A DNA stretch of 64,000 bases from Dimorphilus gyrociliatus (GCA_904063045.1 CAJFCJ010000007.1:3851404-3915403); one strand, 5' to 3'. Positions 27,756 to 60,358 are shown, counted from the first letter of the stretch. The notes: a model not told the origin generated them from the letters alone. Program-made: numbers and translations.

Positions 27756-29691
27756 ATGTTTTCCTTAAATATGACACGACAGTTAGGCAATTATGCAAAA
27801 CTTGTTAAAGGAGGTCGTTACTTGAGTAGTAATCAGGGAATTTTCCGTCAAAACGGATTTGGTGCCATATTAAATAATCATTGTCAAAAGAATGAGGCTG
27901 ACTTCCGATCAGCTCTTTTAATCCGCTCTCATCACTCTGGTAATTGGGAAAAAAAATCAAGCTATTTCGGAATCTTCGGAGTTGTTATAGCCGGTGCAAT
28001 TGGTTTGTTGGTTTAATTATATATTATGTTGTTATGATGTTTCTTCGTAAAAGCATCTTGAGTATATAATTAAAGTTGTACTGCATTGTTTTAATTCTTT
28101 TTGAGGCAAATTTTATGTTTTTATTTGAAAAAAACAGGTGGTACATTGCTTTACACTTCCAAAGTATATTCTGCTGAAAAAGTTAATGATAAAGGCGGCG
28201 AAAGGAGACTGGATTTAAGAAACATTCGAATCAACGAAGTGAGAAAGCATAATAGTAAGGAAAATGGTATTTGGGTTATGTATAAACAAGGCGTATACGA
28301 CATCACAAAATTTGTTGATAAGCATCCTGGAGGAGACAAAGTTCTGCTTGCTGCTGGTGGAGAGTTGGAACCGTTTTGGGATATGTACACAATACATAAG
28401 AATCAACATACTTTAGATTGGCTTGAATCGTATAGAATTGGTAATCTTCATCCAGAAGATGTTAAGGAAAGGCAAAAACGACCAGTAGTAAAGCCAGATG
28501 ATCCCTTTGGTTATGAGCCAACACGTCATCCAGCTCTGCGAACGAATTCCTCAAGACCTTTCACAGCCGAACCCCCATTTGAACTCTTGGCCGACAATTT
28601 TGTAACCCCAGCCGAATTATTTTTTGTTAGAAATCATCTTGGGGTTCCAAATGTTGATGTAAACAAATTTAAGCTAGAGATTCAAGGGAAAGGGGTCAAA
28701 AAACCTATTACATTAAGCCTTGATGACTTGAAGAAAAATTTTAAACACCATACAATAACGTCAGCTGTCCAATGCGCTGGAAATCGCCGAGCAGAACTAT
28801 CTGAATACAAGCCAGTTAAAGGAGTCAGCTGGGGTATTGCTGCAATCAGCAATGCAACGTGGACAGGTGTTAAACTAAGCGATGTCCTTACTTCTGCTGG
28901 TGTTTCAGCAGACGATGATTCCGTTCAACACATTCATTTGACGGGTTTAGACAACGATACCAAAAATTTCTACGAAGCCTCTATACCAGCAGCCCAGGCT
29001 CTCGACGGAAACAAAGATGTACTTCTTGCTTGGGATATGAATGGAAAACCTTTGACTCCAGATCATGGATATCCTCTCAGATGTGTTGTTCCAGGTACCA
29101 TCGGAGCAAGACAAGTTAAATGGTTGTATAAAGTCACGGTATCGGATGAAGAATCTAAGTAAATTTTTTAGTAAGGGTATATATGCAAAGAGATTTATGC
29201 TTATCTTTTTTATTTCTAGATCGCATTGGCAACAGAATGATTACAAACAATTTAATCCAACAATTGATTGGGGCACCCTTGATTATAAGAAAGCGGTACC
29301 TATTCAAGAGTATCCCGTTCAGAGCGCAATTTGTGAACCAAAGCCAAATACTGTCGTTGACGATGATGAAATCACGCTTAAAGGATATGCTTATAGTGGA
29401 GGTGGACGGGGTATATTGCGAGTGGATGTATCAATAGATGGTGGAAAGACCTGGCAAGAAGCAGAACTTGAAAATATTAAACGACCAGTCTATAAACAGT
29501 GGGCTTGGACGTTGTGGGAAACAACAATTGAAATACCCCAAGATCTTCAGGGAAAGAAATTCCAAGTTCTTTGTAAAGCAACTGACACTGCTCATAATAC
29601 GCAACCAGAATTTACATCGTCAGTTTGGAATGTTCGTGGCCTAATTAACAATGCTTGGCATCGCGTTGGGGTCTCGCATCAACAATCATAA
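27756..29691 (+). CDS. SUOX: Sulfite oxidase, mitochondrial; exons 27756-28002, 28138-29158, 29220-29691
   Basis: Basic transit-like N-terminus; cytochrome b5 domain (VYDITKFVDKHPGG); Moco domain (FFVRNH, CAGNRR, DHGYPLR, GARQVKWL); SHWQQNDY across intron 2; dimerisation domain (GYAYSGGGRGILRVDVS, WNVRGLINNAWHRV). Confidence 0.97.
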
Positions 29692-33000: not shown

Positions 33001-36000
33001 AGCAGAGGAGAAACCTAATACTTTATAGGTTTTAGGTGCTTTTATTCCACTACGATAAGCAACGCGTATTTGATTTCTTAATCTATACTTGTTTTCTGAT
33101 AATAGCTCTTCGCCTTCCTCGTCCAAAATAGATTCCAGTTTATGCATTAACTTTTCAACATTTTGAATTGACATACCGAAACTTTGAATGACAGTAATTA
33201 GTTGAGGCATTGTTATATCAGATAAAACTGTTAATTAAAAAAAAATTTAATTTATAAAGGATAAAAATATTGGAATATTTAAATTAAATAATTTTGTCTT
33301 ACCAATATCAACTAATTCTTCAACAGATGATGTAATTAGTCGTATTCTCACCCAATCAGGTAGCAATAAAGCTACCTCCATTGTGTTTAGTTTAAAAGCA
33401 CGTACAACCGTTGATTTATCAGGTAGCAAATAATCAGATAGTTCATCGTAATAAGAATTTAGTCCTGCAAAATGACAAGACTTATATACTCTTAACAGAA
33501 ACTTACAATTTAATAACAAACCTTTAGGTTTACCATAAGATAATAAAATTATCATTGCTTGAACATAATCCATATTCAGAATAGCTTCTGATCCATTTTT
33601 AAACTCTAAACGAATTTTAACATCCGATTCCTTCTTTCAACGAGAAAAAAAAATAAATGACAGTTATACACTAACAAGAAATATTAATATGATATATACC
33701 CATGCGATTTCTTCGTCGTTTGTTACGAATGATGCATGTAATAACGAATACATGAGTTGTATAATTGATTCTTTAGTTAGTGTAGTTCGTTGAACTTCGT
33801 TTTCAGAGTTAGATATAGGAATAAGTAAATGTTTTGCCATACAAACCCGATTGATTAGAATGTCGGAGAGAGCCTATAAAAATAGATATTTAATTATAGA
33901 ATTTCTAGATCTAGATAGATTATTATATTGTGTTTACATCTGCAATTGCTTCAATAACTGGAAAATTCAATTTATAAGACTGAGAAGAGAGGAATACAAT
34001 ATAGGCCGAAACCGTAGTACTATTAGATTCTAATCGAATTGCTTGAACAAGCTCTTCGCAAATTCCTTGTCGCAATTCTTCAAATTTTTGAATCTTAGGT
34101 AATTGTTCAAAAAGCCATCTGTAATTTGGTAGAAGTTTTGACATTGGATTTTTATCATCATTGTCCATTTCACTTTCTTCATCGCTGGAATCAGATGATT
34201 TCCTTGTAATTATTTGCGATAATCCTTTAGTTGCTAGTAATCTGGCAGATTTAGACGGTGAGAGCAATCTTTGTAAAAAAAATTGCAAAATATTCTCTAT
34301 TTGACCAGTCTCACAAGTACCGTTATATAAAAGTCCCTGCAATTGGTCTAATAACAAGGCCTGTTTATCAGATTTCACTTTAATCGATGTCTTTTCCGAA
34401 GTATCTTCAAACCAATCACTAGTTTCCTCTTCTATCGATGTATCATGTAAAAGAAATTCACATAGGCACTGAACAGGTAGGTGATCCAGGGCTCCATTAT
34501 TAGATTCAACAAGTTCAGCCAACCACGGTCGCGACTGTGTTGTACCTTGAGTTTGAATTAATTCTGACAGAAAATCTGGATCTCTGCTTTTACACAACAT
34601 CATGCCTAAATGATACTGGGTAACGAGTCGAGAGATATCATCCAAAACTGCCTGAGGAGGTGCTCTCGCAGGTCCTTTGGATTGTAATAACATAGTCATC
34701 GACAGAAGAAGAGAATTGTCTTTCGTTATAGTTTCAGTAGCCAAATGATTTTCATATTCAAGGATAGTTTCTTGCTCAATGCTCTTTATTTGATTTTCTC
34801 GAGCATAAATCTCTTGTAATTTATTAGCATCAGGTGCCATTGTTGGGGGAGGGAAAGTAATTTGTCGCGTGATAACCATCTCCATAAAACATTTCAATTG
34901 TGGATAATCATACCAGCCCTCCTTCCCTGAGAAAGAAAATAAATTCTTATTTACAGAAATTAGATTGATCAAATATAATTTTTTACCGAAATTTTCAGGA
35001 TTGAAACCGCTCAATATTAAAAGAATTATCCATATTTTCCAATAATTTAGTGTAACAGCCAATTGAGGAGGTGAATAGCTGTAGATAGATAGTATTTAAA
35101 CAATTAAATTGTAATAAACGAAGACTGTTTAATAATTTACTCTTTTGGCATTGCATAACGTTCAGGATGCTTATAAACGCATAATTCAATAAGTAATTTG
35201 ATCAAATCCAATTTCTTAAATTCAAGAATTTTATAATAAGAAGGAATTTTGTGTCTCTCTATTAAAAAAAAATTCAACTTCGTAAAAAATTATTAATAAG
35301 TTTAAAGCTTACGATCAGCGAATAAAAGAGCCGATCTCCTTATCATTCTTTCAGCCAAATCAAGAGCATCAGATGGCGTTAGAGGGTATGAGGCGCCTAA
35401 ACCAAGTAGGAGGGTCCACATTATTGTATCTTCTAGAACAGGAACTTCAGAAACGATTCGCAACATAACGCTAAAATTTGTAAATACAATTGAGAAGAAC
35501 TTGAATAAAAGTAAATAATTAAGATACAGACTTCCTTTCTTGTTCAGGAGGCCAGCCGTCAACTTTACTATAAACATCAAACTTCTCCATAAAGAGAGCT
35601 TTACGTAAACTATAGAAAAATGTCTTTAAACAAAATAGTTCAGTTTGCAGAAAATATAATTACCATCCAATAAATTGATCAGCATTTAAATTACAAACTT
35701 TCTGTATACTATGAAACCATTGCATACAATCACATTGAATTTGAGCTATTGTTTGATGAAATTCGGCAATGACGTTAAAATCTACACGAGATATAAAAAA
35801 ATTGTTGAATAGAAAAAAAATTTCTTGCTTTCTTATTATTAATTTATAGATTAGGAAAGGAATAAAGGAAAACCTTTAAAATCTCCTCTAAAACAGGATC
35901 CAGCTGCCTCTCGTACTGCAGGAGTTATTAGTAATAGGCAGCAATGAGTTATTAAATCAGTGATGCTATGTATGCATCTAATCTATTAAATAGAATAAAG

Positions 36001-39517: not shown

Positions 39518-40449
39518 TTCTTTACGATCAAACACAATATAGTTCAGATCGAATTTGCGTCGAGAAACGATGTCCACACTTCGCGCAATTAAATATATTT
39601 AATTCATTTTATTTCTTTACTCTTACATTTTATTGCGTGAAAAAGTAGTTGAAAAGTTCCTCTAGCATATATACTCAATATAGTTTACTTAATTAAAAAA
39701 TTCCCATAACTTTTTAAATATTTTAATTGATGTTACTAATTCAACTGGAATGTCATGGGTGTCACTGCATATCTCTTACGAGTTAAAAAAGATATCATAG
39801 TTATTTGTTTATCTAATAAACATTTTCGTAAAAATAAAACAAAAAAGACATTCTTATAAGATGAGAGAATATGAATTTATTAGCACCAAACGTAATTTTT
39901 TCCGAATAAATAGAACAGAAGAAGGAAGCAAAAAGACAAATCATGTTTCAGTCATCAAGAAAAAAGACTTAAAAACAAATAATAACGCAAAAGAGAGAAA
40001 AATAAGATATATATATAGATAAATATGACTTTACAATAAAAACATCCAATAAATAATATTCAATACGAAACTAAATAGCAAGCTACTTGTCCAACTGGTT
40101 TGTAACAGTATTATAAAAAGATATATATATATATATATGTATAAGTAGATATACATATAAATAAAGTCAAATAAACTATTTCCCTCTAAAAATGAATAAT
40201 TAAAAAGCCTCTTAGGTAATTTTCGTTTTGCCACTTTCAAGAAAAGTTCTGAAGGTAATTCAATCATTTTTTCAAGGTTTTTTTTCGATTCAGCCTAAAT
40301 TTTCTGTTTAGACATAGAAGTGTAGCGCAATTGTGTTTTTTTTTTTACGAAAAATATCATAGATATGATAGTTATAAATGAAAGCATAATATCACTTTTT
40401 CGATCATTTTTTTTCGATATAAGTTCAACTACTGTCATTTTCGAATAAA

Positions 40450-43400
40450 TCAAGAAAGTACATTATGTAAAGGCACATTCAATGAATGCAATAATTCCTT
40501 AATTTCAGCTTTAAATTGACCCCAATAGCATAAAGAATCAGCAACATTTATCCCAGGATTAGCAGGATCTTGAATTAAAGGATATGGAGGATCAAACTCA
40601 ACTTCAAATTTTCCAGGGAGATAATATTTACTCCACGTTATGCTAAATTGTAAATAAATATGACTTAGTTCCTCGATATTTAAATGGATTCTACAAGTTT
40701 TAAGAAAGACAACTAACCTAGTTTCGGGATTAAAAATATATTGCCCCAATTTCGTAGCCACCTTTGTCAAATCAGTAGATTTTGTCTCTTCGCAAGACTT
40801 TATAACGAGGAGTGACAGAAGATAACTATCAGGCCTGTATTTAGTTTTACGCCATTGAATAGAATTCCTCCAATGCTTAAGGATTTTTATAACATCTTTG
40901 ACCTTCAGATAAGGAGAATGAAGGGGAGATAATAGAGCAATAAATTATAGAATTTTATGATGTTTGTGTTTATTCTTCTTACCTCTTTTCTTTGCTCATT
41001 GATAAACTTTCTCTGTAAACGTACGCTGGCAACCGAGAACCTATTATTAACGTTTAAAGAATAAATTCACAATTAAGATTTACTTAGTTAATTTTTTAAA
41101 TGATCTAGAATACATTACCAGTATTTTTGAAACTTTTCAGTTTCGGAACAAGTCCATTTATATAACTCGCTATATGTTGAACCTTTTTCCCAATCGTATG
41201 AGTAGAATATATCAATATCAACACCAGAACATGTAAATTGAACGGTTGATAATGAAGTTTTTATTTCTGGATAAGAAAACATAAATTATAAATGCAAAAT
41301 ACTTTTCAAGAAGTAACTAGAATAAAACCTGAGCATTTTGGTAAAGGTCTATAAGGGTCAACGTTTTGGTTAGAATAGTGCAGTAATTCCTTTGTCGCCT
41401 GTATGACTGGTATCATCCAACTTTCTTGCCCAGTTTTTGGCAAATCTGTTCAGTCATATTATAATAAATGAATATTTCATATATATATAACTTTATAATT
41501 ACGAATATAGTTTTTTGATCAAATAGCTGACTAATCCGATTATATATATATATATATATCAACGGTCATTGATATATCCCATTTTTAATTGTATTATTAA
41601 TTTCTAACCTGTGCTTAATATAATTAAATCAACATCTGCTCTTGATTTGGTTACGCAATCAGTTCCAATTGATCCCATTTGTACAATTTCTGTTATATTT
41701 ATAGGTAGTTTCTCCTGTTAGTGACAGGAAAACATAAACTTAAAATTGTTGCTCAATTATTATTGAAGTTAGTTAGTAAAACCTGTAGATATTGAATTAC
41801 GGCTGTTATAACGTCTCTTTGCCTCGTTAAATCGTGTTGAGAAGGCACAACATCATCGTGAAAAGAGAGATCACTGCCCAAACCACTTTCGGTCGCGTCG
41901 TCTTTGAAATTTCCCATATCCTTTCTAGTTCTACTAAATTCTTTGTTGATTGTCTTGACATCTCCATTGTTGTTGATAATTTGATAATTAATAAGATTTT
42001 TACAAAATACTCTTGTCATTTCAGCTTGTTGATCATTAAGGGATGACTAATTAAATGAAAATGTATAAAAGTTATTTTATGTATTCAAAATGTAATAGTC
42101 ATAGTTACGTCAATATTTTTTTCCAAAGGTTTAGGCTGTAGACCATTATCCATGTCGTATAGATCCATGAAAGAGCCAACTGCAGAGCCGTCTTTGCTGC
42201 ATGTAGAATTTAAATCTCCTAAAGAGACTTGAGAAGCCGATAATTCTTTCATATCTTCCAGTCGTCTATTTTTCTCCATTACACTTTGCCTTTTTATAAG
42301 GTTAATTAATGTTAAATATTAAAGAAAACAAGTATTTAATTTATTTTTGAAATCTTACCTTGCTCTAATTAATTGTTTGCTTTGATAATCAAATTTAGGG
42401 TAAGATTTCATAGCAACTGGCAAAGTTTGAATCGAAATCATATTAACACGAATAATAACGTTACCATTATCGGTAAATGCTGTTGATTGATCTTTTAACT
42501 GTAAATAATGATGGAAAGGGAAAAAAATGAGTTTTTAACCTAAATTTATTATTAATCAATAATCAATTGAAAACGAGCACGTACTTCTGAAATTTCTATT
42601 GGAAAAGAAGCTAAAAGACCGCAATCGTCTAAAAAATTTGAAAAGTATCCAGTAATACAATCGCCTAACATTTCAACGTCTTTAAACTTTTGCTGAATTT
42701 GTGATCGTAACGTTGCTTTCCAACAAAGCAATTTAGTTTTATTTTGTTGATAGTGGTGAACGCCTTTATCCAATTGACAAGTAAGGTATTTATAATTATT
42801 ATCAATGAACAGTTTCCATAAATTTCCGTCATTGTCTTGAAATGGATCAGCTGATACTGAAGGATCTTGGTGTTTAGATAGAGATGTAATAGGTAATTGT
42901 AAATCTTTGGTAATATTCAATTGTAATATTTCGATACCAACAGATATCGTTTCCACTTTTTGATTAACTGGTAGAATATTATTTAAAGTTCTGCCAAAAC
43001 CATCAAATCTAGCTCCGTGACCGTAGCTATAGAATAATATCTCACTAGATTCACTTTCTAGGTATAGTCTAAATTTTGTTTCAAGCACGAGACCTTTAGA
43101 TTTAGTTGCAAGATATAGATAGGATGCTGGTAAACCATTAGAGTTTAATTTTGTAGGATAAATTCTAAGATACCATCTATTTGCGTATGCAACAAATGTT
43201 GGCGTATCAAAATAATATCCGTTTGTATTTTTCTTTGTTCTTGCTGAACTACTAATATCTATACTCTTTGTAAACGTTAGACTACAATTTGATAACGTTA
43301 ATTCCATAACCAATCGTTTTCCTGTATGGTCTAGAAAACCTTTGCCAATATCTAATAGATCTCTAAACGTTATAAATTTCGATCTTCCTAGGACTGTCTG

Positions 43401-43736
43401 ACCTATTCGAAACTTTTGAGTTGTACTAAAATGCTTATTTAAACCATAGTCCGATCTATTGACAAGACCTAAGATGTACTTTAATTTGACGCTAACGTAT
43501 GGTAATGATGGGGCATCTGAATATTTCCATTTTAGATAAACACCCATGTATTCTTCTTTTTTCATTACAACTATAGACCATTTTTGTCCACAGTAACTAC
43601 ATTCTGAACTCTCGATACTTTTTACTTCGCCTGAAACCAGTTTATAGGGATTTTCAAAAACGAAGGTGAACACGTGAGTATTTTCATTGTACTGGTCGTC
43701 GGCCAGAACACCAAATCTTTGCAAGTGTATTGACAT
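40450..43736 (-). CDS. Triple-MATH-domain / 2'-5'-oligoadenylate-synthetase-like nucleotidyltransferase fusion, predicted 847 aa. Exons 43736-42585, 42498-42359, 42289-42109, 42046-41783, 41714-41609, 41445-41329, 41266-41119, 41040-40983, 40902-40718, 40642-40450
   Basis: Ten exons joined by nine GT-AG introns give one 2544-nt frame. About aa 20-405 holds three MATH-like repeats (F-x-x-x-G-x-x-W-x-L/I cores; GRSKFITFRDLL..KGFLD; LKDQSTAFTDNGNVIIRV). About aa 550-847 is OAS-like: MGSIGTDCVTKSRADVDLII (hG[GS]x11DhDh), VDIDIF, FSVASVRLQRKFI, VKDVIKILKHW, PDSYLLSLL, SITWSKYY, PLIQDPANPGINVA. Confidence 0.85.
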
Positions 43737-44168
43737 TTAAGCTGTAAAAATAAATTTGTGTTGACTATATTTTATAAGGGAAAAAAGTGTGTAGTGAACA
43801 TGTTATGAATAGTTAAGCAGTGAGACAAAGTTTCCCTTATATAAAAATCTGTTTACACTCTCTATTGTTAATTATAAATAGTCCTAGAAAGCCTAGAAAA
43901 ACGGCTCATTCAACTTTTTTATCTTTTGATCTCACTTTCATACATACTCATATGCTCGCAAAGGGTTAAGTCATATAGTGTAAACAATACAATTGATTTA
44001 TTACCTTTACATAAAAAATAATATTCCATTAATATTTTTAACTGATTTAGTTATCATAAACAAAATACAATGTAAATAGACGTACCATCTGCTACCAACT
44101 GTCAAATGATATAAAAACTGAATTTTGCCAGCTATTACAGGTGTTGCCTCACCTTTAACTGACTAAAA

Positions 44169-44182: not shown

Positions 44183-45083
44183 TTTGCAGAACAGATGGAT
44201 AGCTATTCCACTTTTTATATATACTTGCATTTTATAAACGGAATACGTACCACTCTTGCCAACTAGAGTGATCTTACCGAAAAAATTAAACAACAGCCAT
44301 AATAGGGATTTACTTTATAGATATACGTTAAAAGATTATTCCTTTCATTGAAATTTTATCACCTATGCTCAATATTTTAAAAAAACTTCACATCGAACCC
44401 GTTTCGTTTACGCGGTTTAATTTGAAAACATTCCTTAAAAATTTTTCCATTGAACTGTCAAACTCATGCTAATAAATCACTCGTTCTAATTCAAACTTAG
44501 ATCGGATAAAAAAAACCCCTTCATATTTCAATAGAATAATTTTGACCTAAACCTATATTGCTTTTTATCTCTCCCCGCTTCCCCTCTCTTCTCTTTCTTT
44601 AAATGTATATTTCTTTACCTTTAAATCGTATAATTAAGCATTGAAAGAATATTTGGAAGATATATCTTTAGTATTTCTTTTATAGCTTTTTAATTGAAAT
44701 AAAAAAGGAAATACAGTAAAAAAAATATCTGAGATTTTATTTTTTTTTAATAAAAAAAAAATACTTCTTTATACTTTTGATATTGTAGCAAATTTTTTCA
44801 TTAAAACTTGAATATATATTTATATATTTGAATAGGCTGTTAACAACTTGAAAAGAGAACATTGAAAGAGTGTAGAGAGAAGGAGAGAAAGAGTTTATTA
44901 TGTATTAAAATGGAATATTTTCTACACCTGTTGTAATTTTACTTTGTTACATTCAACATATTTTTTTAACTTATTTGTATTAGAATTAATAATTAAATAG
45001 TTAAAAAGCTATTATTTAATACTTAAAGCGGCTAATATCGGCAATAAGCACCTAAAATAATTGACTCTATTTAGATGCTTTGT

Positions 45084-47833: not shown

Positions 47834-50800
47834 ATGGCGGCAGGTGGGACGGGACTGTCTTTCAACTTTCCTAAGAACAAAAATATAGTAAACATGGCGG
47901 GCGAAATATCACAAGATATGCATTTAAAAATGTCCAAAAAAATTGCTCAATTAACAAAAGTTAGTTACATTTTATTTTTATATGCCAAATCGATGGCTAA
48001 AGCGAATTATTTTGATTTATGCATTTTTTAGGTTATTTATGCATTAAATACTAAAAATGATGAACATGAAGCAATAATGGCAACGACGAAAGAGCAATAT
48101 GAAGAAGAAGTTCAAAAGATACTCGAGGATACAAAATTGAAAATTGAATCGTACAAGGACATTATGAAAGAAGACACAAATCAAAGGAAGTTGATAGAGA
48201 ATCTTGAAAAAAGGATATCTCAACATGAAAAAGAGAAAGTCGATGCTCAAGAAACGTTTCAAAAATATAAGGAAATTATGGCCGAGAAAATATCGGAGAT
48301 GAAAACATCCCACTCAGAGAAGTTGATTTCATTATCTAATGAAGTTCTCAATATCAAAAAAGACTTTGAATCTCAATTGGAAAAGTTATTAGAAGCAAAA
48401 AGAGAAATAGAAGAGGAAAAGGAAAAAATGATTGACGAATTAAAAAAGTCTTACGAAATTAAAGCAGAAGAATTAAAATTAGGATTATCCTCAAAAGAGA
48501 AGAATAATGAAATATATCAGAATCAGGTGGAAACTTTAGAGAGCGAGTGTAAGCAGTTAAGACTTGATAAGGATAAATTACGAGAGGAGTTTGAGAATAG
48601 ATTGAGGGAGGAGAGGGCATCACACGAAAAGGAATTGGAATCTTTGAATACTTCCCAAAACTCCGCTCACGAAGAGCACATGAAAAGATTACAAGAAGAC
48701 TACGATAAGCTTCTCAAAGTTCATGAAGATATGAACGTTGATAATTTGCAAAAAATCCAAGAACTATTAACAAAACAAAGCGAAGTGGAGGCGGAAGCCG
48801 ATAATTTTAAAAGGATGTTAGAAGAGTTACAAAATTCAATGAAGGGTATGAACTCAACAACAGCATCCTTATCTCAACAACTCTCAACTACTCAGGAAGA
48901 ACTCTCAAATAGTATTTCTATCAATAAGCAACTCGAAGGTGAAATAAAAGCGATCAATGATCGATGCGAAAAGCAATCGACTGAACTCATCGATAAGTCC
49001 TGTATGATATTGCTATGATAATATTCATTTATTGTATTATTTATGTTATTCTATTTTATCTTATCTTTTTTCCTCCAGCTACAATTGGTAAACTGGAAGC
49101 TGTAAAGATTCAAGTGGATTCCCAATTAAAAGAAAGTCTCGGCGAATTGAATAAGGTAAAAGATAAACTCAAATGGCTAGAAGATGAGAGAAAATCGATG
49201 GAAGAAAAAGGACAATCCCAAATGACAGAGCAATCTAAACAATTAAAATCATTAGAAAAAAGTTTAGAGAGTTTATCAGCCGAAAAGCAAGAACTTCAGC
49301 AAAAATATGATAGAGATATGGAATCACTGAAACAGTCTTCCGATGAAAGAGAGAAAACATCCGATAAAAAATGGAAAACGAAGCTGGAAGAAATGGAAGC
49401 AAAGTTCACAAAAGAGATTGAAGAACACAGGCGCTTGGCGGAAGAAAGTTATGCAAAGCTAAAAAATGATCTTGAAGGTCAATTGGGGAATGAAAAAGAG
49501 AATTTAATGGATTGCAATAAGCGTATAGAAGAACTATCGAAAGAAAAAGAGGATTATCAGAATACACTTCAAAATGCTCGACTAGAGGTAAGTTCATCTG
49601 TAAAAGAGAGCTCTCTTTTTTTATGAAAACGATAGAATATCTATCTGTTAACCAAAGCACGCACGCAAGGTTGAAAAGAATTATTACAGGCCTATAATTT
49701 TCTTTTACTCCAACAATAATCTATTTGCCAATATTTTAAAATTTATAAATCCCTAATGCTAAAATGAACAAATATGATTGTTGAATTACTTTAGTTTGTT
49801 TAGTCCAAATAATAGATACTAGGTGGAGCTATAGATAATTATTTTTTCGTTCTAGATCGAAGGATTACAAAAGAGTTTACAAGAGAGGGATGCTAATTTA
49901 GGTGGTGCAACGAGTGATTTAGAGGGTTTAAAGAACAAATGCAAGAGTTTAGAAGAAGAATTAGAAGAAAGTCATGATCAATTACGCAATTTAAAGACCC
50001 AATTTAATAGTATTAAAAATGAGTTAGAAAACTCTAAAAAAACTAATGAAAAGCTTATAAAAGATAATGAAGAGAGATTAAGGAAAGAATTAGATAAGCT
50101 ATCTAAGGACTTAGATGAAAAATGGATGCTTAGGTTAAGAACTGAAACTGAAAAAGTATTAACAGAACAAGAAAAGAAGTCCTCAGAAGATAAAAAATCT
50201 GCAATAGATGAATTGCTAAAATTACACGGTGAAGAATTGTCTTCAGAGAGGTCATCGTGGGATGAACGAGTTCAGAATCTTTTAAAAGAAATAGCATCAT
50301 TAAAGTCAGCATTAGATTCTAAATCAATAGAAAATCAAGAGATAATTAACAGGATTAAGAGAGAAGCTGAAGAAGAGAATAATATATTGAGAAAGGACAT
50401 GTTAGCAGCTGCTAATGAATTTAAGGATAACATAGATGAATTAGATAAAAAACATGCAAGTGAGATTTTAGTGTTAGAGCAGAGGAATGACGAAAAGTTA
50501 AAAGAATTTGAAATTAATTTAAAAAAGAAACATGTAGATGACATGAAAGCTCAGTTGACAGCTCATAATAGTACGGTCGAGATGATTAAAGAGAATTGCG
50601 AGAAAGACAAACAAAAATCACTAGAAGACTTACGTAAAAAGAATCTAGAAAAAATAGGTACTCTCAGTATATTCCCTTTTCAACCTATATAGTATTTAAC
50701 ATTTACACTTTCTCCTTTTTCTTTTTATAGCAATCATCAGATCTGATTTAGAACAGGCTCATGCCCTAGATATGGAACAACGCGAAAGACAGCATGATCA

Positions 50801-55602: not shown

Positions 55603-58600
55603 TTAGTTCGCTTGATTCTTAAGATGGCAGTTAATTGCCAATAGGCGTTCTTTGGCTGGTATAAATCTTTTTTGGAGGGATAGTGTTGAGAGGAGAAATA
55701 ATCTAGCTGTTTTATAATTTTTCTATATGGAAAGAGAACATTATCAAAATAAATTATATGAAAAATTATTGAAAAAACATACTTGAGATGCTAAAAGGTT
55801 AGCAGCAACAAAGTGTGTAGCAACTAAAGGTGTTTCGGTATCTAGGGCCTTGTCTAACACAACGATCGCTTCATTTATACGATTCGATCTATGAAGAATA
55901 TCGACCATACTTAATAAAGAAATATCTTTCGCTTGTTCCGGAGCAAAACTATAAGAAACCAGGGCACATTTTACAGCTTCCATACCTACACCCCTAACTC
56001 TCCAATATAAAGTAGCTAAACTAGCTAGAATCCACGAAGTACTGTTCATTTTTAACGCAAGGCCAATTCTTGTACCAACTTCCTCTATTGTTTTGGTTCT
56101 TTCACCTGGTCCGATATCGAGTAACAAATCTTTTAAGCCAATTTCAGCAGAATATGTCAACTCTTCAGCCTTTTTAATACCATCAATTTCATCAAATAAA
56201 GAAGCTTTCTTAGCCAGACGAATATCGCAATACGGATGTATTTCATCAATATCATCTAAAGCTATATTAAAGTCTATATAATCTTCATTGACAATACCCT
56301 TTGTTGATAGGGAAATCCACGTGCTAGCAAATGTTATACTAGGTTTGTCTGTTTGACTTTGGCACTCTTCCGCAGTTGGCATGGTAACATATTTATAACT
56401 TCTAATATGTCGTTCTAATTCAACTTTTCTACGCGATTTTGTAGCATCAGTCTGAAATATTTGTTAAAGTATTACATTAACAAAATATAATAAGGAAAAT
56501 ATAAAAATATTCCTCTAATAGGCGATTTATCTACTACTTACTACATAAGCAAAAAAGATGAGGGGCCTATCTGCTCCCACCCCAAAACTGCACCATAAGC
56601 AAAACAATTGAAATTTTAATTAGTAATTAATTCTCTTTAAAATTAATATAGAACAGAGACCAGGTGTGTTAATAGATTAATTGATGGTAAATACACAGCA
56701 TAGAGAGAAGAAAAGAATGTACAGTATAACAGTTTGTATAGGGTGCTAATTTTTCATTATCGATACGTTGTGAATTATCATAAGTTATGAAAAAAATGAT
56801 AATAGTAATAAAAAATAATAAGAGAATATGTGATATTAATGCTGTGAAATGAAACTTTCGGCTACTATTTAAAAACATAGGCTTTTAGTTAAGAATAAGA
56901 ACATTTAGGGAGAAGAAAAAAACAAATGGGAAGGATTATAAATAGATTAATTTAAAACGATAGCATTTAATGGAAAGGTTAAAGTATTTAAGAAGAAAGG
57001 AAAAGCTTAGGCGATAGATAATATATTTTTATACTTACGTAATACTTAAAGTGGTCTAAATTGCAACCTTCGCTTTTTGATCCGTCGTTAAATATAACAC
57101 AATCATTCGGCGATATTTGCAGGTTTCCTTCACCTATAAATAGTTTTCGATGTATTATTCCCGAAGAAAGTTCCAACTTAATGTGTGGACGCCTTTTCTA
57201 CAAATTAAGAGTATAAAATAAATTTTACTAATCAAATTGGGAAAAGTATCATAAAAACTTACTCCGGAAATAATTTCATTGCAGTCATTTCCCTCGCACA
57301 AGATTTTTACTAAAAGGAAAAGAAAATATATACAACTATATAAGAATATTAAAAAATAAAATATTGATAAAACAGAATAACAAACATTTTTCGGTATCCG
57401 GCTTGTAGCAATTGCCTGTTGCTTCAAAAACACAATTCTCAAAACCTTCACTATCTTTCCGACAAAAGATAGTTGGAGCATTTTCAACTGCTTTTTTCAT
57501 TATCATTGTAGCTACTGGGGCACTGCTCTGAGCAGCTCTATGAAACTTTATGTAACAATTCAAAGCTCTAAGCATAGTCAGGGCTTGCTGATGATCGGGT
57601 TGTTGATGAAGACATTCCTCATAATGGTAAATTGCTCCAGAAGTGTTTCCCTTTGCAGCTAATAGATTAGCAAGCATGAAATGAGTTTCGGGTTCCATAG
57701 AATTTATACTTGATGCCTCTCGAATGAGAATAATCGCCTCATCAACTCTCCCCCACTTATAAAGAATATTAGCAAGATTTACCAAGGGAACATCTCGATA
57801 CTTTGTGGGTACCAAATACAAAGAACGTCTTAAACATTCAATTGAATGGTAGTTGTTCCCAATCACTCGCCAATATAAACCGGCAACGTTGTAAAGCAGC
57901 CAAGCTGGTCCAACTTGAGATTTTAGAGCAGTTAGGATACGTTGACCTATTTCTTCTTCAGTGGCATCTGGCACCAAAGACTGAAGAAGAGGTCTCATAT
58001 ACGAATCATAGAGTTTCAGTGGTACTTCTGTCCTCTTCTTAATAGCTTCCAGGTGATCGTAGGATTGAGTTCCTTCTGGAATGTTATCAAGATTAACACA
58101 GACAGGTGGATACCAAGGTAAATCATGACCAACTCCGTCAGTTAATCCAAGACCCGCAGATAAGATGGTTCGTACGTCGAAACCTTTATTTTCCGGTGGT
58201 AAATATGTCGTTGGAAAATCATTCCAAGCCGGTATTTTCTGAACATATGTATCACATTCTTGTTTATCAGGCCAATTCTTTTGTTTGTAAACAAATCTGC
58301 TAAGTTCTTCTTTTGTATATTCTTCTCTTTTAACATAGCGTGACTCCTTAACAGGGTTCAAATATTCTCTTGGTGTCTTAGATCCAAAATTGTTTACTTC
58401 ATCGCCATCCCAAACCTCGGTGTACGGTGGCCAGTTGGGGAAAACATCCCTGAATTTTTTAACATTATTAAAACTAAGTTTAGAAAGCTTCTTCGGATGC
58501 CATTCACAAGCATTATCATTGCACAACTCTTCTTGTTCTAGCATCTTTTTAGCTAATTTACTATTTTCGTAACTCTGTTGCTGTATTTCCTTTTCAGAAT

Positions 58601-60358
58601 CTAATGCTTTTTCGGTATTTAGCACAAAGCGTTCCTTTTCAAAAAGTTCATGGCGTTTTTGATAAGAACGCAGCTCATTTAAAGTTTTTTGTAGGGTTTT
58701 ATGCTGAGCTTCTAATGCAGTCTCTATCTTATGGTGACATTTTACAGCGTGTTTTCGCCTGTAGGCCGCTTCAAAATCTTTCTGCATTATCAATGTATTT
58801 TCGAAGCATATAACTGATTTATTGTAATCTCCCAAAACAGCGTATATATTTCCCAGAGTAAAGTGATTAACATTTAGATCGCTATTGATATCGATAGCTG
58901 CGTGGAGAAGAACTGCAGCTTCTTTTGATCTTTTAGCTCTATGTAAAATGTTGGCAAGACTTATCAAAGCTACGTCTTTATGTTGTCTCGGAGAAAAGTG
59001 CAATGCCCTTCGGAGACATTCAACAACATTGAACGCATTCCCTTTGATTCTCCAATAAAACGCCGCCATATTGTATAGCACCCACGACGTATTATTACGC
59101 TTTAATGCATCACTTATTCTGCTACCATAATCGTTGACATTTTCATCAGGACAGACTGCGTTAATTAGGCCTAATTCGGCGGCAGCTGTCAAATTTTTAC
59201 GTAATCTAACACCATGCAGATGATCAAAAGAGTGCATTGAAAAAGGTAAATCATACGCAGATATGCAATCGGGTGGAATATTATTTAAGGTAGATGGTTC
59301 GAGAAAATCTTCTCCACTGTCAATTATAAAAGAGTTATTAAATAAGCAAACCTGTTAAAATATGTATGCTATTTTACTTGATATTTTTATTTTGCAGTGG
59401 AAGGACTGTGCTAATGTACAGATCATACTCAGTTAGTGGTTTGCCCGCTATGATACAATCTGAATCTTCTTTATAATATCTCTCTTCTAAACCTGGCTCA
59501 TCTTTATCGTTTTGATCTATGTCTTTCTTTTTCTTAACAAGCTCATCTTGTAAATTTTGTAATAAATAAGCCCTTCCTTCTTGTCTTAACAACGCCAAAA
59601 GGTCATAGGGACGGTGTAAATTAAATACAGAATCAACCTGAAAAAAAAGCAACATTGATTGGTAAGCAAAAGAATACATTAGATTATCAAAATTTAATGC
59701 ATTATCTCAATGAAGAATACGAATATTAATATTGATCCTGGGAGCGAGAGTTCAAAATGAATTGAACAATAGAAATGACTCGGGTAATATATTTCTCGTT
59801 AAAGTCACAATTATCAAATAGCTTATAATTTTAAAGAGAAAAATGACCTCGCTTTGGGACATTACACTTGAATAACTTTTTTACTAAGACAAGCCTTCAT
59901 ATACCAAATTAATTTACTATTGAGATTTTTAATGAGCATCATAAAATTGAGTACACACAAAACACGTTTTATTGTAATCTCTACTTCTAAATTGTGATAA
60001 GCAGTTGTAACTTTAGCAGACGACAAGTTTAAATAGTTTTTCTTTGACTGACCGCAATCGCCTCTTTTGTTACGTTCAGAAGAATTCGAAAGTAACCCTT
60101 AGTAAAACTTAAAGTTCTTAATCACAGTTTATTAAATTTTTAATCAGCCTAACTTCTGATAATCGAAGAGACGTCAATCGAGTAAGATATGTCTTGAAAA
60201 TTGCGTACGAGTTAATAAAAAAAATAGACATCAGTCTTTAATCGTACCTGGGCCTGAAGTTTACCACCTTCAGTTACAATCCAATGTGTAGAGGCATCGG
60301 AAATTGTAGAACACAACAAAAGTACAAAGCTAAACACCTCAACCAACAACACCGCCAT
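55603..60358 (-). CDS. TTC17: Tetratricopeptide repeat protein 17, multi-exon
   Basis: Signal peptide followed by STHWIVTEGGKLQAQ-VDSVFNLHRPYDLLALLRQE. Three TPR modules each begin with SW/AW..A..YWR. C-terminus LSTLSLQKRFIPAKERLLAINCHL; stop at 55605-55603. Confidence 0.95.

What the first reader, a model, noticed from the sequence alone, without database searches (positions are those of the whole stretch)
40450..43736. Triple-MATH / OAS-like nucleotidyltransferase fusion: candidate new innate-immune signalling gene
Seen: the ORF track shows four unrelated-looking fragments, but they splice through nine canonical introns into one 847-aa frame. It comprises three tandem MATH-like repeats, a roughly 145-aa Ser/Asp/Asn-rich linker and a complete OAS-type fold, from the N-terminal helix (SFHDDVVPS...ITAVIQYLQ) to the OAS1_C motifs (LQRKF, LKHW, SYLLSLL, WSKYY, LIQDPANP). 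Known: OAS enzymes belong to the cGAS/OAS/CD-NTase superfamily and make 2'-5'-linked second messengers on sensing nucleic acid. MATH domains are the peptide-binding adaptor modules of TRAFs, SPOP and USP7. Inference: I know of no described MATH-OAS architecture. It could be a sensor or synthase activated by, or signalling through, protein partners instead of (or as well as) dsRNA, in an animal group where RNase L is not generally reported.
Basis: partly seen in the sequence, partly recalled or inferred. Interest (0 to 1): 0.92.

Follow-up and report, generated by a model that had tools for sequence, protein, structure and literature searches.

The report
Annelid OAS enzyme with three MATH domains
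This is a real, expressed, single gene that joins three peptide-binding MATH domains to an apparently active OAS-type antiviral nucleotidyltransferase; the design is conserved among annelid worms, sits unnamed in databases, and has not been studied.

Summary
On the minus strand, ten coding exons (43736-40450) with nine GT-AG introns splice into one 847-aa frame. A 3,051-nt transcript contig identical to the window crosses all nine junctions exactly as modelled. A contig from a roughly 92%-identical relative does the same and adds a 5' non-coding exon (about 44148-44086).

The protein has three MATH/TRAF-C beta-sandwiches, a conserved helix, a poorly conserved Ser/Asp/Asn-rich linker and an OAS-family nucleotidyltransferase. 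The OAS1 G-S loop, the three catalytic Asp and the KHW lysine are all present.

The same collinear architecture occurs in Helobdella robusta XP_009029399.1 (an unnamed "MATH domain-containing protein"), in two other transcriptome contigs and in one further genomic contig. Of 27 listed coding differences to the close relative, 25 are synonymous.

So the architecture is not unique to this genome and is already in public databases. I found no paper describing it. Function is inferred. Most likely it is an active 2'-5' nucleotidyltransferase whose MATH module supplies protein or peptide recognition, for targeting or activation.

Verdict: a new variant of a known kind, of moderate to high interest. 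The scan had already flagged the OAS part of this stretch (s1-084783).

The parts
44086..44148 (-). 5' non-coding exon (its upstream end is a minimum). It is spliced to 43741 across a 344-nt GT-AG intron (44085-43742).
   Evidence: The loose end of the X2 contig matches window 44087-44116 with one mismatch, where 0 matches are expected by chance. The joint 43741/44086 with CT..AC ends is seen in X2 and X4. The sequence was read. This is seen only in the ~92%-identical relatives. The window species' contig ends at 43678.
42585..43736 (-). Coding exon 1, from the ATG at 43736 (aa 1-384). It holds MATH1 (43736-43254), MATH2 (43253-42882) and most of MATH3 (from 42854).
   Evidence: ORF and model. 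Pfam MATH_2 at 1e-10. The profile of repeat 1 hits the USP7 TRAF-like domain at 2.6e-7 and SPOP at 4e-5 in the PDB. Repeats 1 and 2 compare by hhalign at 92% probability, E 5e-7. On models of the 44%-identical homologue, VIA gives repeat 1 Z 16.9 to USP7, repeat 2 Z 8.7 to SPOP MATH, and repeat 3 Z 10.6 to USP7.
42359..42498 (-). Coding exon 2 (aa 385-431). It holds the last strands of MATH3 and the start of a conserved helix.
   Evidence: The junctions are seen in X5, X2 and X4. The homologue model has strands 413-426 and helix 436-470.
42109..42289 (-). Coding exon 3 (aa 431-491). It holds the conserved helix with the motif RLEDMKELSASQVSL (aa 440-454), then the start of the low-complexity linker.
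   Evidence: Alignment. The motif is also present in L002. The homologue model is helical and then disordered here.
41783..42046 (-). Coding exon 4 (aa 492-579). It holds the rest of the Asp/Ser/Asn-rich linker and the N-terminal helix of the OAS domain (SFHDD...ITAVIQYLQ).
   Evidence: composition D16 S15 N12 over aa 431-565. Linker identity is only 27% to P0065 and 15% to Helobdella, against 33-55% in the domains. pLDDT is below 50 in the homologue model.
41609..41714 (-). Coding exon 5 (aa 580-614). This is the NTase P-loop and metal site: G593-S594 (41675-41670), D606 (41636-41634) and D608 (41630-41628).
   Evidence: These align to human OAS1 G62-S63, D75 and D77 through P0065. Pfam NTP_transf_2 is 2.8e-8 on P0065 and weak (0.051) on this exon alone.
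41329..41445 (-). Coding exon 6 (aa 615-653), NTase N-lobe.
   Evidence: Junctions in X1, X5, X2 and X4. Alignment.
41119..41266 (-). Coding exon 7 (aa 654-702). It holds the third catalytic Asp, D672 (41213-41211), in GVDIDIF.
   Evidence: It aligns to OAS1 D148 in GVEFDVL through P0065.
40983..41040 (-). Coding exon 8 (aa 703-722). It holds the LQRKF helix, which corresponds to OAS1 LQRDF with R195.
   Evidence: The joint is seen in X5.
40718..40902 (-). Coding exon 9 (aa 723-783). This is OAS1_C, with LKHW (the OAS1 K213 equivalent) and RPDSYLLSLL.
   Evidence: Pfam OAS1_C at 5e-8. All 9 listed differences to X2 in this exon are synonymous.
40450..40642 (-). Coding exon 10 (aa 784-847 plus the TGA stop at 40452-40450). 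It holds WSKYY and LIQDPANPGINV.
   Evidence: Of 15 listed differences to X2, 13 are synonymous.
40200..40449 (-). 3' UTR (minimum extent).
   Evidence: The X5 contig runs unbroken from 40642 to at least 40200 and over the end of the laid stretch.

Best explanation
SHOWN. This is one expressed gene of an AT-rich, short-intron animal genome, probably the annelid Dimorphilus gyrociliatus. It has 11 exons, 10 of them coding, and encodes 847 aa. From N to C the protein carries:
- three MATH/TRAF-C-type beta-sandwich domains (aa 1-161, 162-285, about 295-416);
- a conserved helix of about 35 aa with a Ser-rich motif;
- a fast-evolving, disordered Asp/Ser/Asn-rich linker of about 100 aa;
- a complete OAS-family nucleotidyltransferase domain (aa about 549-847).
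The OAS domain keeps the G-S loop, the catalytic Asp triad (D606, D608, D672), the KHW lysine and the DP.NP motif. The whole architecture is collinear in Helobdella robusta and in at least three other sequences. It is under purifying selection.

INFERRED. The C-terminal domain is a working 2'-5' nucleotidyltransferase that makes oligoadenylate-like second messengers, as other invertebrate OAS enzymes do. The MATH module, whose best-matching solved relatives (USP7, SPOP, TRAF2) bind short peptide motifs, gives the enzyme a protein or peptide recognition function. My split for the role of the MATH module is:
- about 45%: it recruits or concentrates the synthase at a signalling complex or a bound target protein, and RNA may still be the activator;
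- about 25%: ligand binding by the MATH module itself switches the synthase on. This would resemble peptide-binding HORMA proteins activating CdnC, a bacterial enzyme of the CD-NTase clade within which the OAS superfamily falls;
- the remainder: other roles such as oligomerisation or stability.
The flexible linker would let the two halves act on the same complex. An innate-immune role is assumed from the families involved and is not shown.
For: Single mRNA:
- The X5 contig, identical to the window, crosses all nine junctions. X2 and X4 orthologue contigs do the same.
- P0065 is one uninterrupted 870-aa ORF on a 3,438-nt transcriptome contig, with an in-frame stop upstream of its ATG.
- The P0066 transcript contig is open into MATH3 at its 5' end.
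- Genomic locus L002 has the MATH exon followed by OAS exons on the same strand.

OAS identity:
- Pfam OAS1_C on the window and on homologues.
- A family profile against the PDB gives OAS2 8.8e-30, OAS1 3e-22, OASL 1e-13, OAS3-DI 3e-11 and CdnC 4e-6. Every other chain listed at E<=1 is a weak MDM2 match (E>=0.13), which I read as chance.
- Foldseek on the homologue model gives OAS1 at 1e-7 with probability 1.0, plus OAS2, OAS3, OASL and CdnC.
- The Atlas feature score is 0.97 to OAS clusters.

Active site: it is conserved in the window, P0065, P0066, Helobdella and L002.

MATH identity.

Constraint:
- 25 of 27 listed coding differences to the ~92% orthologue are synonymous.
- The domains are 33-55% identical across family members, against 15-27% in the linker.

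Module shuffling: relatives of the triple-MATH module carry other C-termini, including a U-box E3 ligase domain (P0036). This fits an adaptor or recognition cassette.

Precedents:
- The OAS superfamily nests within bacterial clade C CD-NTases (PMC10732462).
- A Geodia sponge OAS is reported not to need dsRNA. I know this only from the title of Lopp et al. 2002 in the reference list of PMC6307210. I did not read that paper.
Against: - There is no biochemical, expression-response or interaction data for any family member.
- The structural evidence for the OAS domain and for MATH repeats 2 and 3 comes from AlphaFold models of a 44%-identical homologue (P0065) built on shallow alignments of 15-21 rows. 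The C-lobe of the OAS model is poorly confident (pLDDT below 50 at 803-846). Foldseek TM-scores to OAS1 are low (0.32-0.34) even though the E-values are good.
- Some residues that I recall as dsRNA contacts of OAS1 are changed: the K60 equivalent is Met, K199 is Asn and K204 is Glu. R195 is kept (alignment and my own mapping). This neither proves nor excludes RNA activation.
- Peptide-groove residues of the MATH domains were not analysed.
- No RNase L or other 2-5A receptor was looked for in this genome.
- The synonymous/non-synonymous count uses only the 40 differences the tool listed out of 172, mostly in exons 9-10.
Confidence: 0.6

Rival explanations
1. It is an ordinary dsRNA-activated OAS. 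The MATH domains are a passive add-on for stability, oligomerisation or subcellular anchoring, with no sensing or signalling role.
For: The OAS1 R195 equivalent (LQRKF) and the overall OAS1 architecture are retained. A conserved helix after MATH3 could be a coiled coil for self-association. Vertebrate OAS2 and OAS3 also gained extra, non-catalytic domains.
Against: Three MATH domains have been kept collinear and at 37-55% identity across sequences that are only 34-44% identical overall. The best solved structural matches are all peptide-binding MATH domains. Several basic residues that I recall as RNA contacts are replaced (mapping).
Confidence: 0.25
2. The OAS-like domain is a catalytically silent scaffold or RNA binder, as in human OASL. 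The protein then acts purely as an adaptor.
For: Human OASL (PDB 4xq7) is among the matches.
Against: The G-S loop, all three catalytic Asp and the KHW Lys are conserved in every family member examined, namely the window, P0065, P0066, Helobdella and L002. From my own knowledge, not tested here, OASL has lost its catalytic residues.
Confidence: 0.08
3. It is a gene-model artefact: two neighbouring genes (a MATH gene and an OAS gene) joined by a permissive splice model or by chimeric assembly.
For: The tool warns that a contig across two genes does not prove one transcript. Prokaryote-style gene calls in public collections list the MATH exon alone (P0001, P0002).
Against: Every exon pair is joined at an exact GT-AG intron in three independent runs from three organism labels. 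P0065 is one ORF without stops on an independent transcriptome contig. The reading frame is continuous across all junctions. The NCBI Helobdella model has the same architecture.
Confidence: 0.02
4. It is an active nucleotidyltransferase, but its product or substrate is not 2'-5' oligoadenylate. For example it could make a different linear or cyclic oligonucleotide, or nucleotidylate a protein held by the MATH module.
For: The OAS domain is a divergent subfamily. Word-indexed profile searches of 5.8 billion proteins returned only fragments of the same family, with no ordinary OAS1-sized protein at E<=1e-3. The OAS1 Q229 equivalent is Ser (mapping). Natural 2',5'-linked heteronucleotides are reported from sponges (title and abstract of PMC2852836).
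Against: The best matches by sequence and fold are all bona fide OAS enzymes. No data point to another chemistry.
Confidence: 0.1

Closest known systems
Vertebrate OAS1/OAS2 (2'-5'-oligoadenylate synthetases; PDB 4ig8, 1px5, 9h1z)
   Same: The C-terminal ~300 aa match along the full OAS1 length (profile E 3e-22 to OAS1, 9e-30 to OAS2). The match includes the N-terminal helix, the G-S loop, the Asp triad, the KHW lysine, the LQR.F helix and the DP.NP motif. Pfam OAS1_C scores above its cutoff.
   Different: There are about 550 extra N-terminal residues (three MATH domains, a helix and a linker). Pairwise identity is only about 20%. Several basic residues that I recall as dsRNA contacts are substituted. 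No RNase L partner is known in this animal group; I did not search for one here.
Helobdella robusta XP_009029399.1 / UniProt T1FGW8 ('MATH domain-containing protein', uncharacterised)
   Same: The architecture is collinear end to end at 34% identity. It has Pfam MATH_2 + OAS1_C and the same catalytic motifs.
   Different: It is longer (979 aa), with longer low-complexity linkers. It comes from a distant annelid lineage, the leeches. It has no functional annotation or literature.
MATH/TRAF-C domains of USP7, SPOP and TRAF2
   Same: Repeat 1 has sequence-level similarity (USP7 2.6e-7, SPOP 4e-5). All three repeats match the fold in models (Z 16.9, 8.7 and 10.6).
   Different: Pfam reported no RING, TRAF zinc-finger, BTB or USP catalytic domain on exon 1 or on the full-length homologues P0003 and P0065. 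Three MATH domains sit in tandem in one chain. Repeats 2 and 3 are too diverged for sequence searches.
TRADD-N-OAS and other adaptor-OAS fusions of invertebrates (Kaur, Iyer, Burroughs & Aravind 2021, PMC8195603)
   Same: An OAS domain is fused to an immune or apoptosis adaptor module in invertebrates. This is the same logic of domain shuffling.
   Different: That paper lists TRADD-N fusions, not MATH fusions. TRADD-N is itself the known ligand of the TRAF2 MATH domain. Here the MATH side of such an interaction is what is fused to OAS.
Bacterial CBASS CdnC with HORMA/TRIP13 (PDB 6p80, 6u7b)
   Same: CdnC is the only non-OAS nucleotidyltransferase matched by sequence (4e-6) and it is also matched by fold. 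It is an NTase switched on by a separate peptide-binding protein, which is a functional analogy for a MATH-regulated OAS.
   Different: The regulator is HORMA rather than MATH and is a separate polypeptide. The system is bacterial. The analogy is my inference only.

Membership tests
OAS family (2'-5'-oligoadenylate synthetases, OAS superfamily of CD-NTases) | OAS1_C domain (Pfam PF10421) above the gathering score | tested here: met
   The window read-through 40453-40944 scores 33.2 bits against a cutoff of 19.9. The homologues score 36-48 bits.
OAS family (2'-5'-oligoadenylate synthetases, OAS superfamily of CD-NTases) | Pol-beta-type NTase core with a G-S loop and three catalytic Asp (OAS1 S63, D75, D77, D148) | tested here: met
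   The window has G593-S594, D606, D608 and D672. These align through P0065 to human OAS1. They are conserved in all five family sequences.
OAS family (2'-5'-oligoadenylate synthetases, OAS superfamily of CD-NTases) | Closest solved relatives are OAS enzymes rather than cGAS/Mab21, poly(A) polymerase, TUTase or CCA-adding enzymes | tested here: met
   The profile against the PDB gives OAS2, OAS1, OASL and OAS3, then CdnC. No other NTase class appears at E<=1. The Foldseek top 50 contains OAS1/2/3/L and CdnC as its only nucleotidyltransferases. This fold test was done on the homologue P0065, not on the window protein.
OAS family (2'-5'-oligoadenylate synthetases, OAS superfamily of CD-NTases) | Basic dsRNA-binding surface (residues recalled from memory: OAS1 K42, K60, R195, K199, K204) | tested here: inconclusive
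   The R195 equivalent is kept (R in LQRKF). The K60 equivalent is M, K199 is N and K204 is E, by my mapping of the alignment through. The residue list is from memory.
OAS family (2'-5'-oligoadenylate synthetases, OAS superfamily of CD-NTases) | Synthesis of 2'-5'-linked oligoadenylates | not testable with these tools
   This needs an enzyme assay.
OAS family (2'-5'-oligoadenylate synthetases, OAS superfamily of CD-NTases) | Coupling to RNase L or another 2-5A receptor | not tested
MATH / TRAF-C domain superfamily | Pfam MATH or MATH_2 above the gathering score | tested here: met
   Exon 1 gives MATH_2 at 42.4 bits (cutoff 32) and MATH at 21.7 bits (cutoff 21.2), with the best stretch at aa 36-135, which is repeat 1.
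MATH / TRAF-C domain superfamily | Eight-stranded antiparallel beta-sandwich superposable on TRAF2, USP7 or SPOP, for each of the three repeats | tested here: met
   On homologue models, repeat 1 gives Z 16.9, rmsd 2.0 A and 132/138 residues to USP7. Repeat 3 gives Z 10.6 with 126/137 residues to USP7. Repeat 2 gives Z 8.7 with 105 residues at 22% identity to SPOP. The values for repeats 2 and 3 are near the tool's stated noise level of Z 7-8, but all 50 top rows are MATH domains.
MATH / TRAF-C domain superfamily | Peptide-binding groove residues | not tested
   I did not attempt a residue-level comparison of the grooves.
TRAF proteins proper | N-terminal RING and TRAF zinc fingers, with a coiled coil preceding a single C-terminal MATH | tested here: not met
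   Pfam finds no RING or zf-TRAF in exon 1 or in the full-length homologues. The MATH domains are N-terminal and triplicated. This is not a TRAF.
cGAS-like receptors (cGLR / Mab21) | Mab21 domain (PF03281) and cGAS-type fold | tested here: not met
   Pfam gives no Mab21 hit. No cGAS chain appears at E<=1 in the PDB profile search.

The most novel reading that the evidence does not exclude
The triple-MATH module is the sensor. Binding of a host danger-signal protein or a pathogen peptide by the MATH domains allosterically switches on the fused OAS domain. This would make the family a protein-sensing, not nucleic-acid-sensing, OAS-type pattern-recognition receptor. It would be an animal counterpart, fused in cis, of the HORMA-CdnC logic of bacterial CBASS. 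It would also offer a handle on what invertebrate OAS enzymes do without a known RNase L.
Probability: 0.2. Interest if true: 0.85.

Novelty: new variant of a known kind. Interest (0 to 1): 0.6.

Why it matters
OAS enzymes are widespread in invertebrates, but how they are activated there and what their products act on remain open questions. To my knowledge RNase L is not generally reported outside vertebrates, and the title of Lopp et al. 2002 (seen in a reference list) reports a sponge OAS that does not need dsRNA.

A family that hard-wires a peptide-recognition module onto an apparently active OAS gives a concrete, testable hypothesis for protein-directed control of a second-messenger synthase in animals. 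The family is conserved between a dinophilid-like worm and a leech. Laboratory annelids would make tractable systems for testing it.

It also adds MATH to the list of adaptor domains recombined with OAS during invertebrate immune-gene evolution.

Tried and rejected
1. The spliced window protein could not be given to the structure or homology tools. I used the 44%-identical full-length homologue P0065 as a proxy and mapped residues through a local MAFFT alignment.
2. The window's own protein is not in the protein collections. The best hit to exon 1 was 48% identical.
3. Searches with the OAS part alone and with a family profile returned only fragments of the same family. No ordinary OAS1-sized relatives came back, so I could not build a tree to date the fusion.
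4. P0103 (961 aa) appeared in a cluster with a family fragment, but it is a kinase-TPR protein and irrelevant.
5. In the first big alignment (A1) two short window exon fragments were misplaced into the MATH region. I rebuilt it as A2 without them.
6. Sequence profiles of MATH repeats 2 and 3 found no MATH chain in the PDB. The hhalign comparison of repeat 1 with repeat 3 gave only 14% probability. The evidence for repeat 3 is therefore structural only.
7. The C-terminal regions of other triple-MATH proteins gave no Pfam domain. These were from Owenia, sea urchin, crinoid, Intoshia and a damselfly.
8. There are no paralogues of either half elsewhere in the 64-kb window.
9. Model coordinates are not exposed to scripts. 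I could not examine inter-domain geometry or a possible pseudo-trimer of the three MATH domains.
10. Literature searches for the Helobdella accession and for MATH together with OAS found nothing specific.
Full report
**1. The observation**

The window is AT-rich (about 30% GC). The minus strand between 43736 and 40450 holds one long ORF of 394 aa and several shorter ORF pieces. I joined them at GT-AG sites. This gives ten coding exons: 43736-42585, 42498-42359, 42289-42109, 42046-41783, 41714-41609, 41445-41329, 41266-41119, 41040-40983, 40902-40718 and 40642-40450. The nine introns are 62-163 nt long. The CDS is 2,544 nt and encodes 847 aa.

Public transcript assemblies confirm the model.
- Run X5 is 100% identical to the window. 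Its 3,051-nt contig (word depth 259) covers 43678 to 40200 and skips precisely the nine modelled introns.
- Runs X2 and X4 carry other organism labels and are about 92% identical. Their 3,037-nt and 2,011-nt contigs show the same joints.
- A low-depth coral-reef metatranscriptome (X1) shows four of the joints.

Every neighbouring exon pair is joined at a canonical intron, and the frame is continuous. This is therefore one mRNA and not two genes.

The X2 and X4 contigs also reveal a non-coding 5' exon at about 44148-44086. It is spliced to 43741 across a 344-nt GT-AG intron. The gene therefore starts upstream of the reported interval.

**2. What the protein is**

Pfam places MATH_2 (1e-10) and MATH on exon 1, and OAS1_C (5e-8) on exons 9-10.

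I could not submit the spliced window protein as a whole, so I looked for full-length relatives. An exhaustive HMMER scan with exon 1 found only 61 proteins at E<=1e-3 among 1.8 billion cluster representatives. One of them, P0003 (979 aa), carries both MATH_2 and OAS1_C. It is Helobdella robusta XP_009029399.1 / UniProt T1FGW8, an unnamed "MATH domain-containing protein".

Searching with P0003 found P0065. P0065 is 870 aa and is encoded as a single uninterrupted ORF on a 3,438-nt transcriptome contig, with an in-frame stop upstream of its ATG. The window protein aligns collinearly end to end with both, at 44% identity to P0065 and 34% to Helobdella.

Two further members have the same design.
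- P0066 is a 5'-truncated transcript whose open frame continues into MATH3.
- L002 is a genomic contig with the MATH exon followed on the same strand by OAS exons.

A family-profile search also recovered about ten exon-sized fragments from other genomic contigs.

**3. The OAS half**

A profile of the family's C-terminal domain was searched against all PDB sequences. It scores OAS2 at 8.8e-30 (both OAS2 domains), porcine OAS1 at 3e-22, human OAS1 at 1e-20, OASL at 1e-13, OAS3 domain I at 3e-11 and the bacterial CD-NTase CdnC at 4e-6. No cGAS, poly(A) polymerase, TUTase or CCA-adding enzyme appears at E<=1.

Foldseek on an AlphaFold model of P0065 gives the same set, with OAS1 at 1e-7 and probability 1.0. 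TM-scores are low (about 0.33) because the C-lobe of the model is poorly confident.

I mapped residues through the HMMER alignment to human OAS1 and my alignment.
- The window has G593-S594 (OAS1 G62-S63), D606 and D608 (D75, D77), and D672 (D148).
- It has the KHW lysine (K213), Y in RPDSY (Y230) and DPANP (DPADP).
- The same residues are present in P0065, P0066, Helobdella and L002.
- Of the basic residues I recall as dsRNA contacts, R195 is kept (LQRKF). The equivalents of K60, K199 and K204 are M, N and E.

This agrees with the earlier first-stage note s1-084783 on the same stretch. RNA activation remains an open question.

That criterion is not met, so the OAS assignment stands.

**4. The MATH half**

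*Repeat 1.* It is a bona fide MATH domain by sequence. Its family profile hits the USP7 TRAF-like domain at 2.6e-7 and SPOP at 4e-5. By model it gives Z 16.9, rmsd 2.0 A and 132 of 138 residues aligned.

*Repeat 2.* It is related to repeat 1 by profile-profile comparison (92% probability, E 5e-7). In a dedicated model of repeats 2 and 3 (pLDDT 80, pTM 0.76) it superposes on SPOP MATH with Z 8.7 and 22% identity.

*Repeat 3.* It spans the exon 1/exon 2 junction and has no detectable sequence similarity to other MATH domains. Its model superposes on USP7 with Z 10.6 and 126 of 137 residues aligned, and on SPOP and TRAF2 at about Z 9. All 50 top rows are MATH domains.

"Three tandem MATH-like repeats" is therefore supported, with decreasing certainty from repeat 1 to repeat 3. 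It rests on a homologue's model for repeats 2 and 3.

There is no RING, TRAF zinc finger, BTB or protease domain, so this is not a TRAF, SPOP or USP7 orthologue.

After MATH3 comes a conserved helix (window aa ~420-454). It carries the motif RLEDMKELSASQVSL, which is recognisable in all members and even in Intoshia and sea-urchin triple-MATH proteins. A disordered linker follows. It is rich in D, S and N and is only 15-27% identical between members, against 33-55% for the domains.

**5. Constraint and range**

Of the 40 window-versus-X2 differences the tool listed, 13 lie in the 3' UTR. Of the 27 that are coding, 25 are synonymous. Most lie in exons 9-10, so purifying selection is documented directly only for the OAS C-lobe. 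The MATH domains are shown to be constrained by their cross-species conservation.

Named relatives of the triple-MATH module come from annelids (Helobdella, Owenia), the annelid-derived Intoshia, echinoderms, crabs and a damselfly. Outside the MATH-OAS family they carry other C-termini or unrecognised ones, and one carries a U-box. The module behaves like a cassette recombined with different effector domains.

Earlier follow-up notes of this scan name the genome as Dimorphilus gyrociliatus. I did not verify that directly. The short introns here fit the published median of 66 bp for that species (PMC7854359), and the closest named full-length relative is an annelid.

**6. How it most likely works**

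The following is shown.
- The gene is a single expressed transcript.
- The architecture is conserved across at least five sequences.
- The active-site residues are intact.
- The MATH folds are of the peptide-binding type.

The following is inferred.
- The OAS domain synthesises 2'-5'-linked oligonucleotides.
- The MATH module provides protein or peptide recognition. It either recruits the synthase to a complex (my preferred reading) or acts as the activating sensor itself.
- The second option has a functional precedent in CBASS. There, peptide-binding HORMA proteins activate CdnC. CdnC is the only non-OAS nucleotidyltransferase that this domain matches. The OAS superfamily is reported to nest within bacterial clade C CD-NTases (PMC10732462).

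The rival explanations are a canonical dsRNA-activated OAS with a passive MATH add-on, an OASL-like inactive scaffold, a different nucleotidyl-transfer chemistry, and a model artefact. They are weighed in the report sections. The artefact reading is essentially excluded.

**7. Novelty**

I found no paper that mentions a MATH-OAS protein or the Helobdella accession. Kaur et al. 2021 (PMC8195603) list OAS among the domains fused to TRADD-N in invertebrates. OAS fusions to adaptor modules are therefore known in principle. TRADD-N is itself a known MATH ligand, which makes the MATH-OAS version a natural but undescribed counterpart.

The architecture is already deposited, unannotated, in NCBI and UniProt. 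I rate it a new variant of a known kind: a previously uncharacterised, conserved, probably annelid-wide OAS subfamily with an N-terminal triple-MATH module. It is not categorically new.

Interest is moderate to high (0.6). It would rise sharply if the MATH module proves to be the activating sensor.

Noticed in passing
window 44086/43741 junction, running to about 43620 (minus strand): Splicing of the 5' non-coding exon to exon 1 creates an upstream ATG (...GCAGATG|CTTAAATG...) 8 nt before the main start and out of frame with it. It opens a 40-codon uORF that overlaps the main ATG. The same junction sequence is present in the ~92%-identical orthologue contigs. It may act as a translational brake on this gene.
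   Followed up: partly
window about 42264-42220 (aa 440-454); also P0065 455-469, L002 6947-7030 and P0012: A conserved helix after MATH3 ends in a Ser-rich motif, L-[ED]-D-M-[KR]-[ED]-[LM]-[SA]-A-S-x-x-S-L. It is kept across all MATH-OAS members and is recognisable in Intoshia triple-MATH proteins. It could be a coiled-coil or phosphorylation site.
   Followed up: no
window 40643-40717 (intron 9, minus strand): Intron 9 (75 nt) is in frame and has no stop codon. The ORF track therefore reads straight through exons 9 and 10. Retention of this intron would insert 25 aa into the OAS C-lobe without truncating the protein.
   Followed up: no
window 41533-41567 (intron 5): There is a (TA)n microsatellite inside the longest intron (163 nt). 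The read-laying tool skipped it as a repeat.
   Followed up: no
P0036, P0030, P0041, P0016, P0012 (proteins): Relatives of the triple-MATH module occur with other C-termini. One metagenomic protein has a U-box E3 ligase domain. Owenia, Strongylocentrotus, Anneissia and Intoshia have long regions without any Pfam match. The module seems to be a shuffled cassette.
   Followed up: partly
window 28101-29691 (+), 33923-35062 (-), 48077-49018 (+), 57336-59237 (-): The neighbouring ORFs are ordinary animal genes. They include sulfite oxidase (Cyt-b5 + Oxidored_molyb + Mo-co_dimer), an Integrator subunit 1 fragment, a FAM184-like coiled-coil protein and a TPR protein. There is no immune gene cluster around the MATH-OAS gene and no paralogue in the window.
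   Followed up: partly
window 44363-44575: A separate low-depth X5 contig (213 nt, depth 3.1) lies about 200 nt upstream of the 5' exon. This could be an upstream transcript, an alternative start or genomic carry-over.
   Followed up: no
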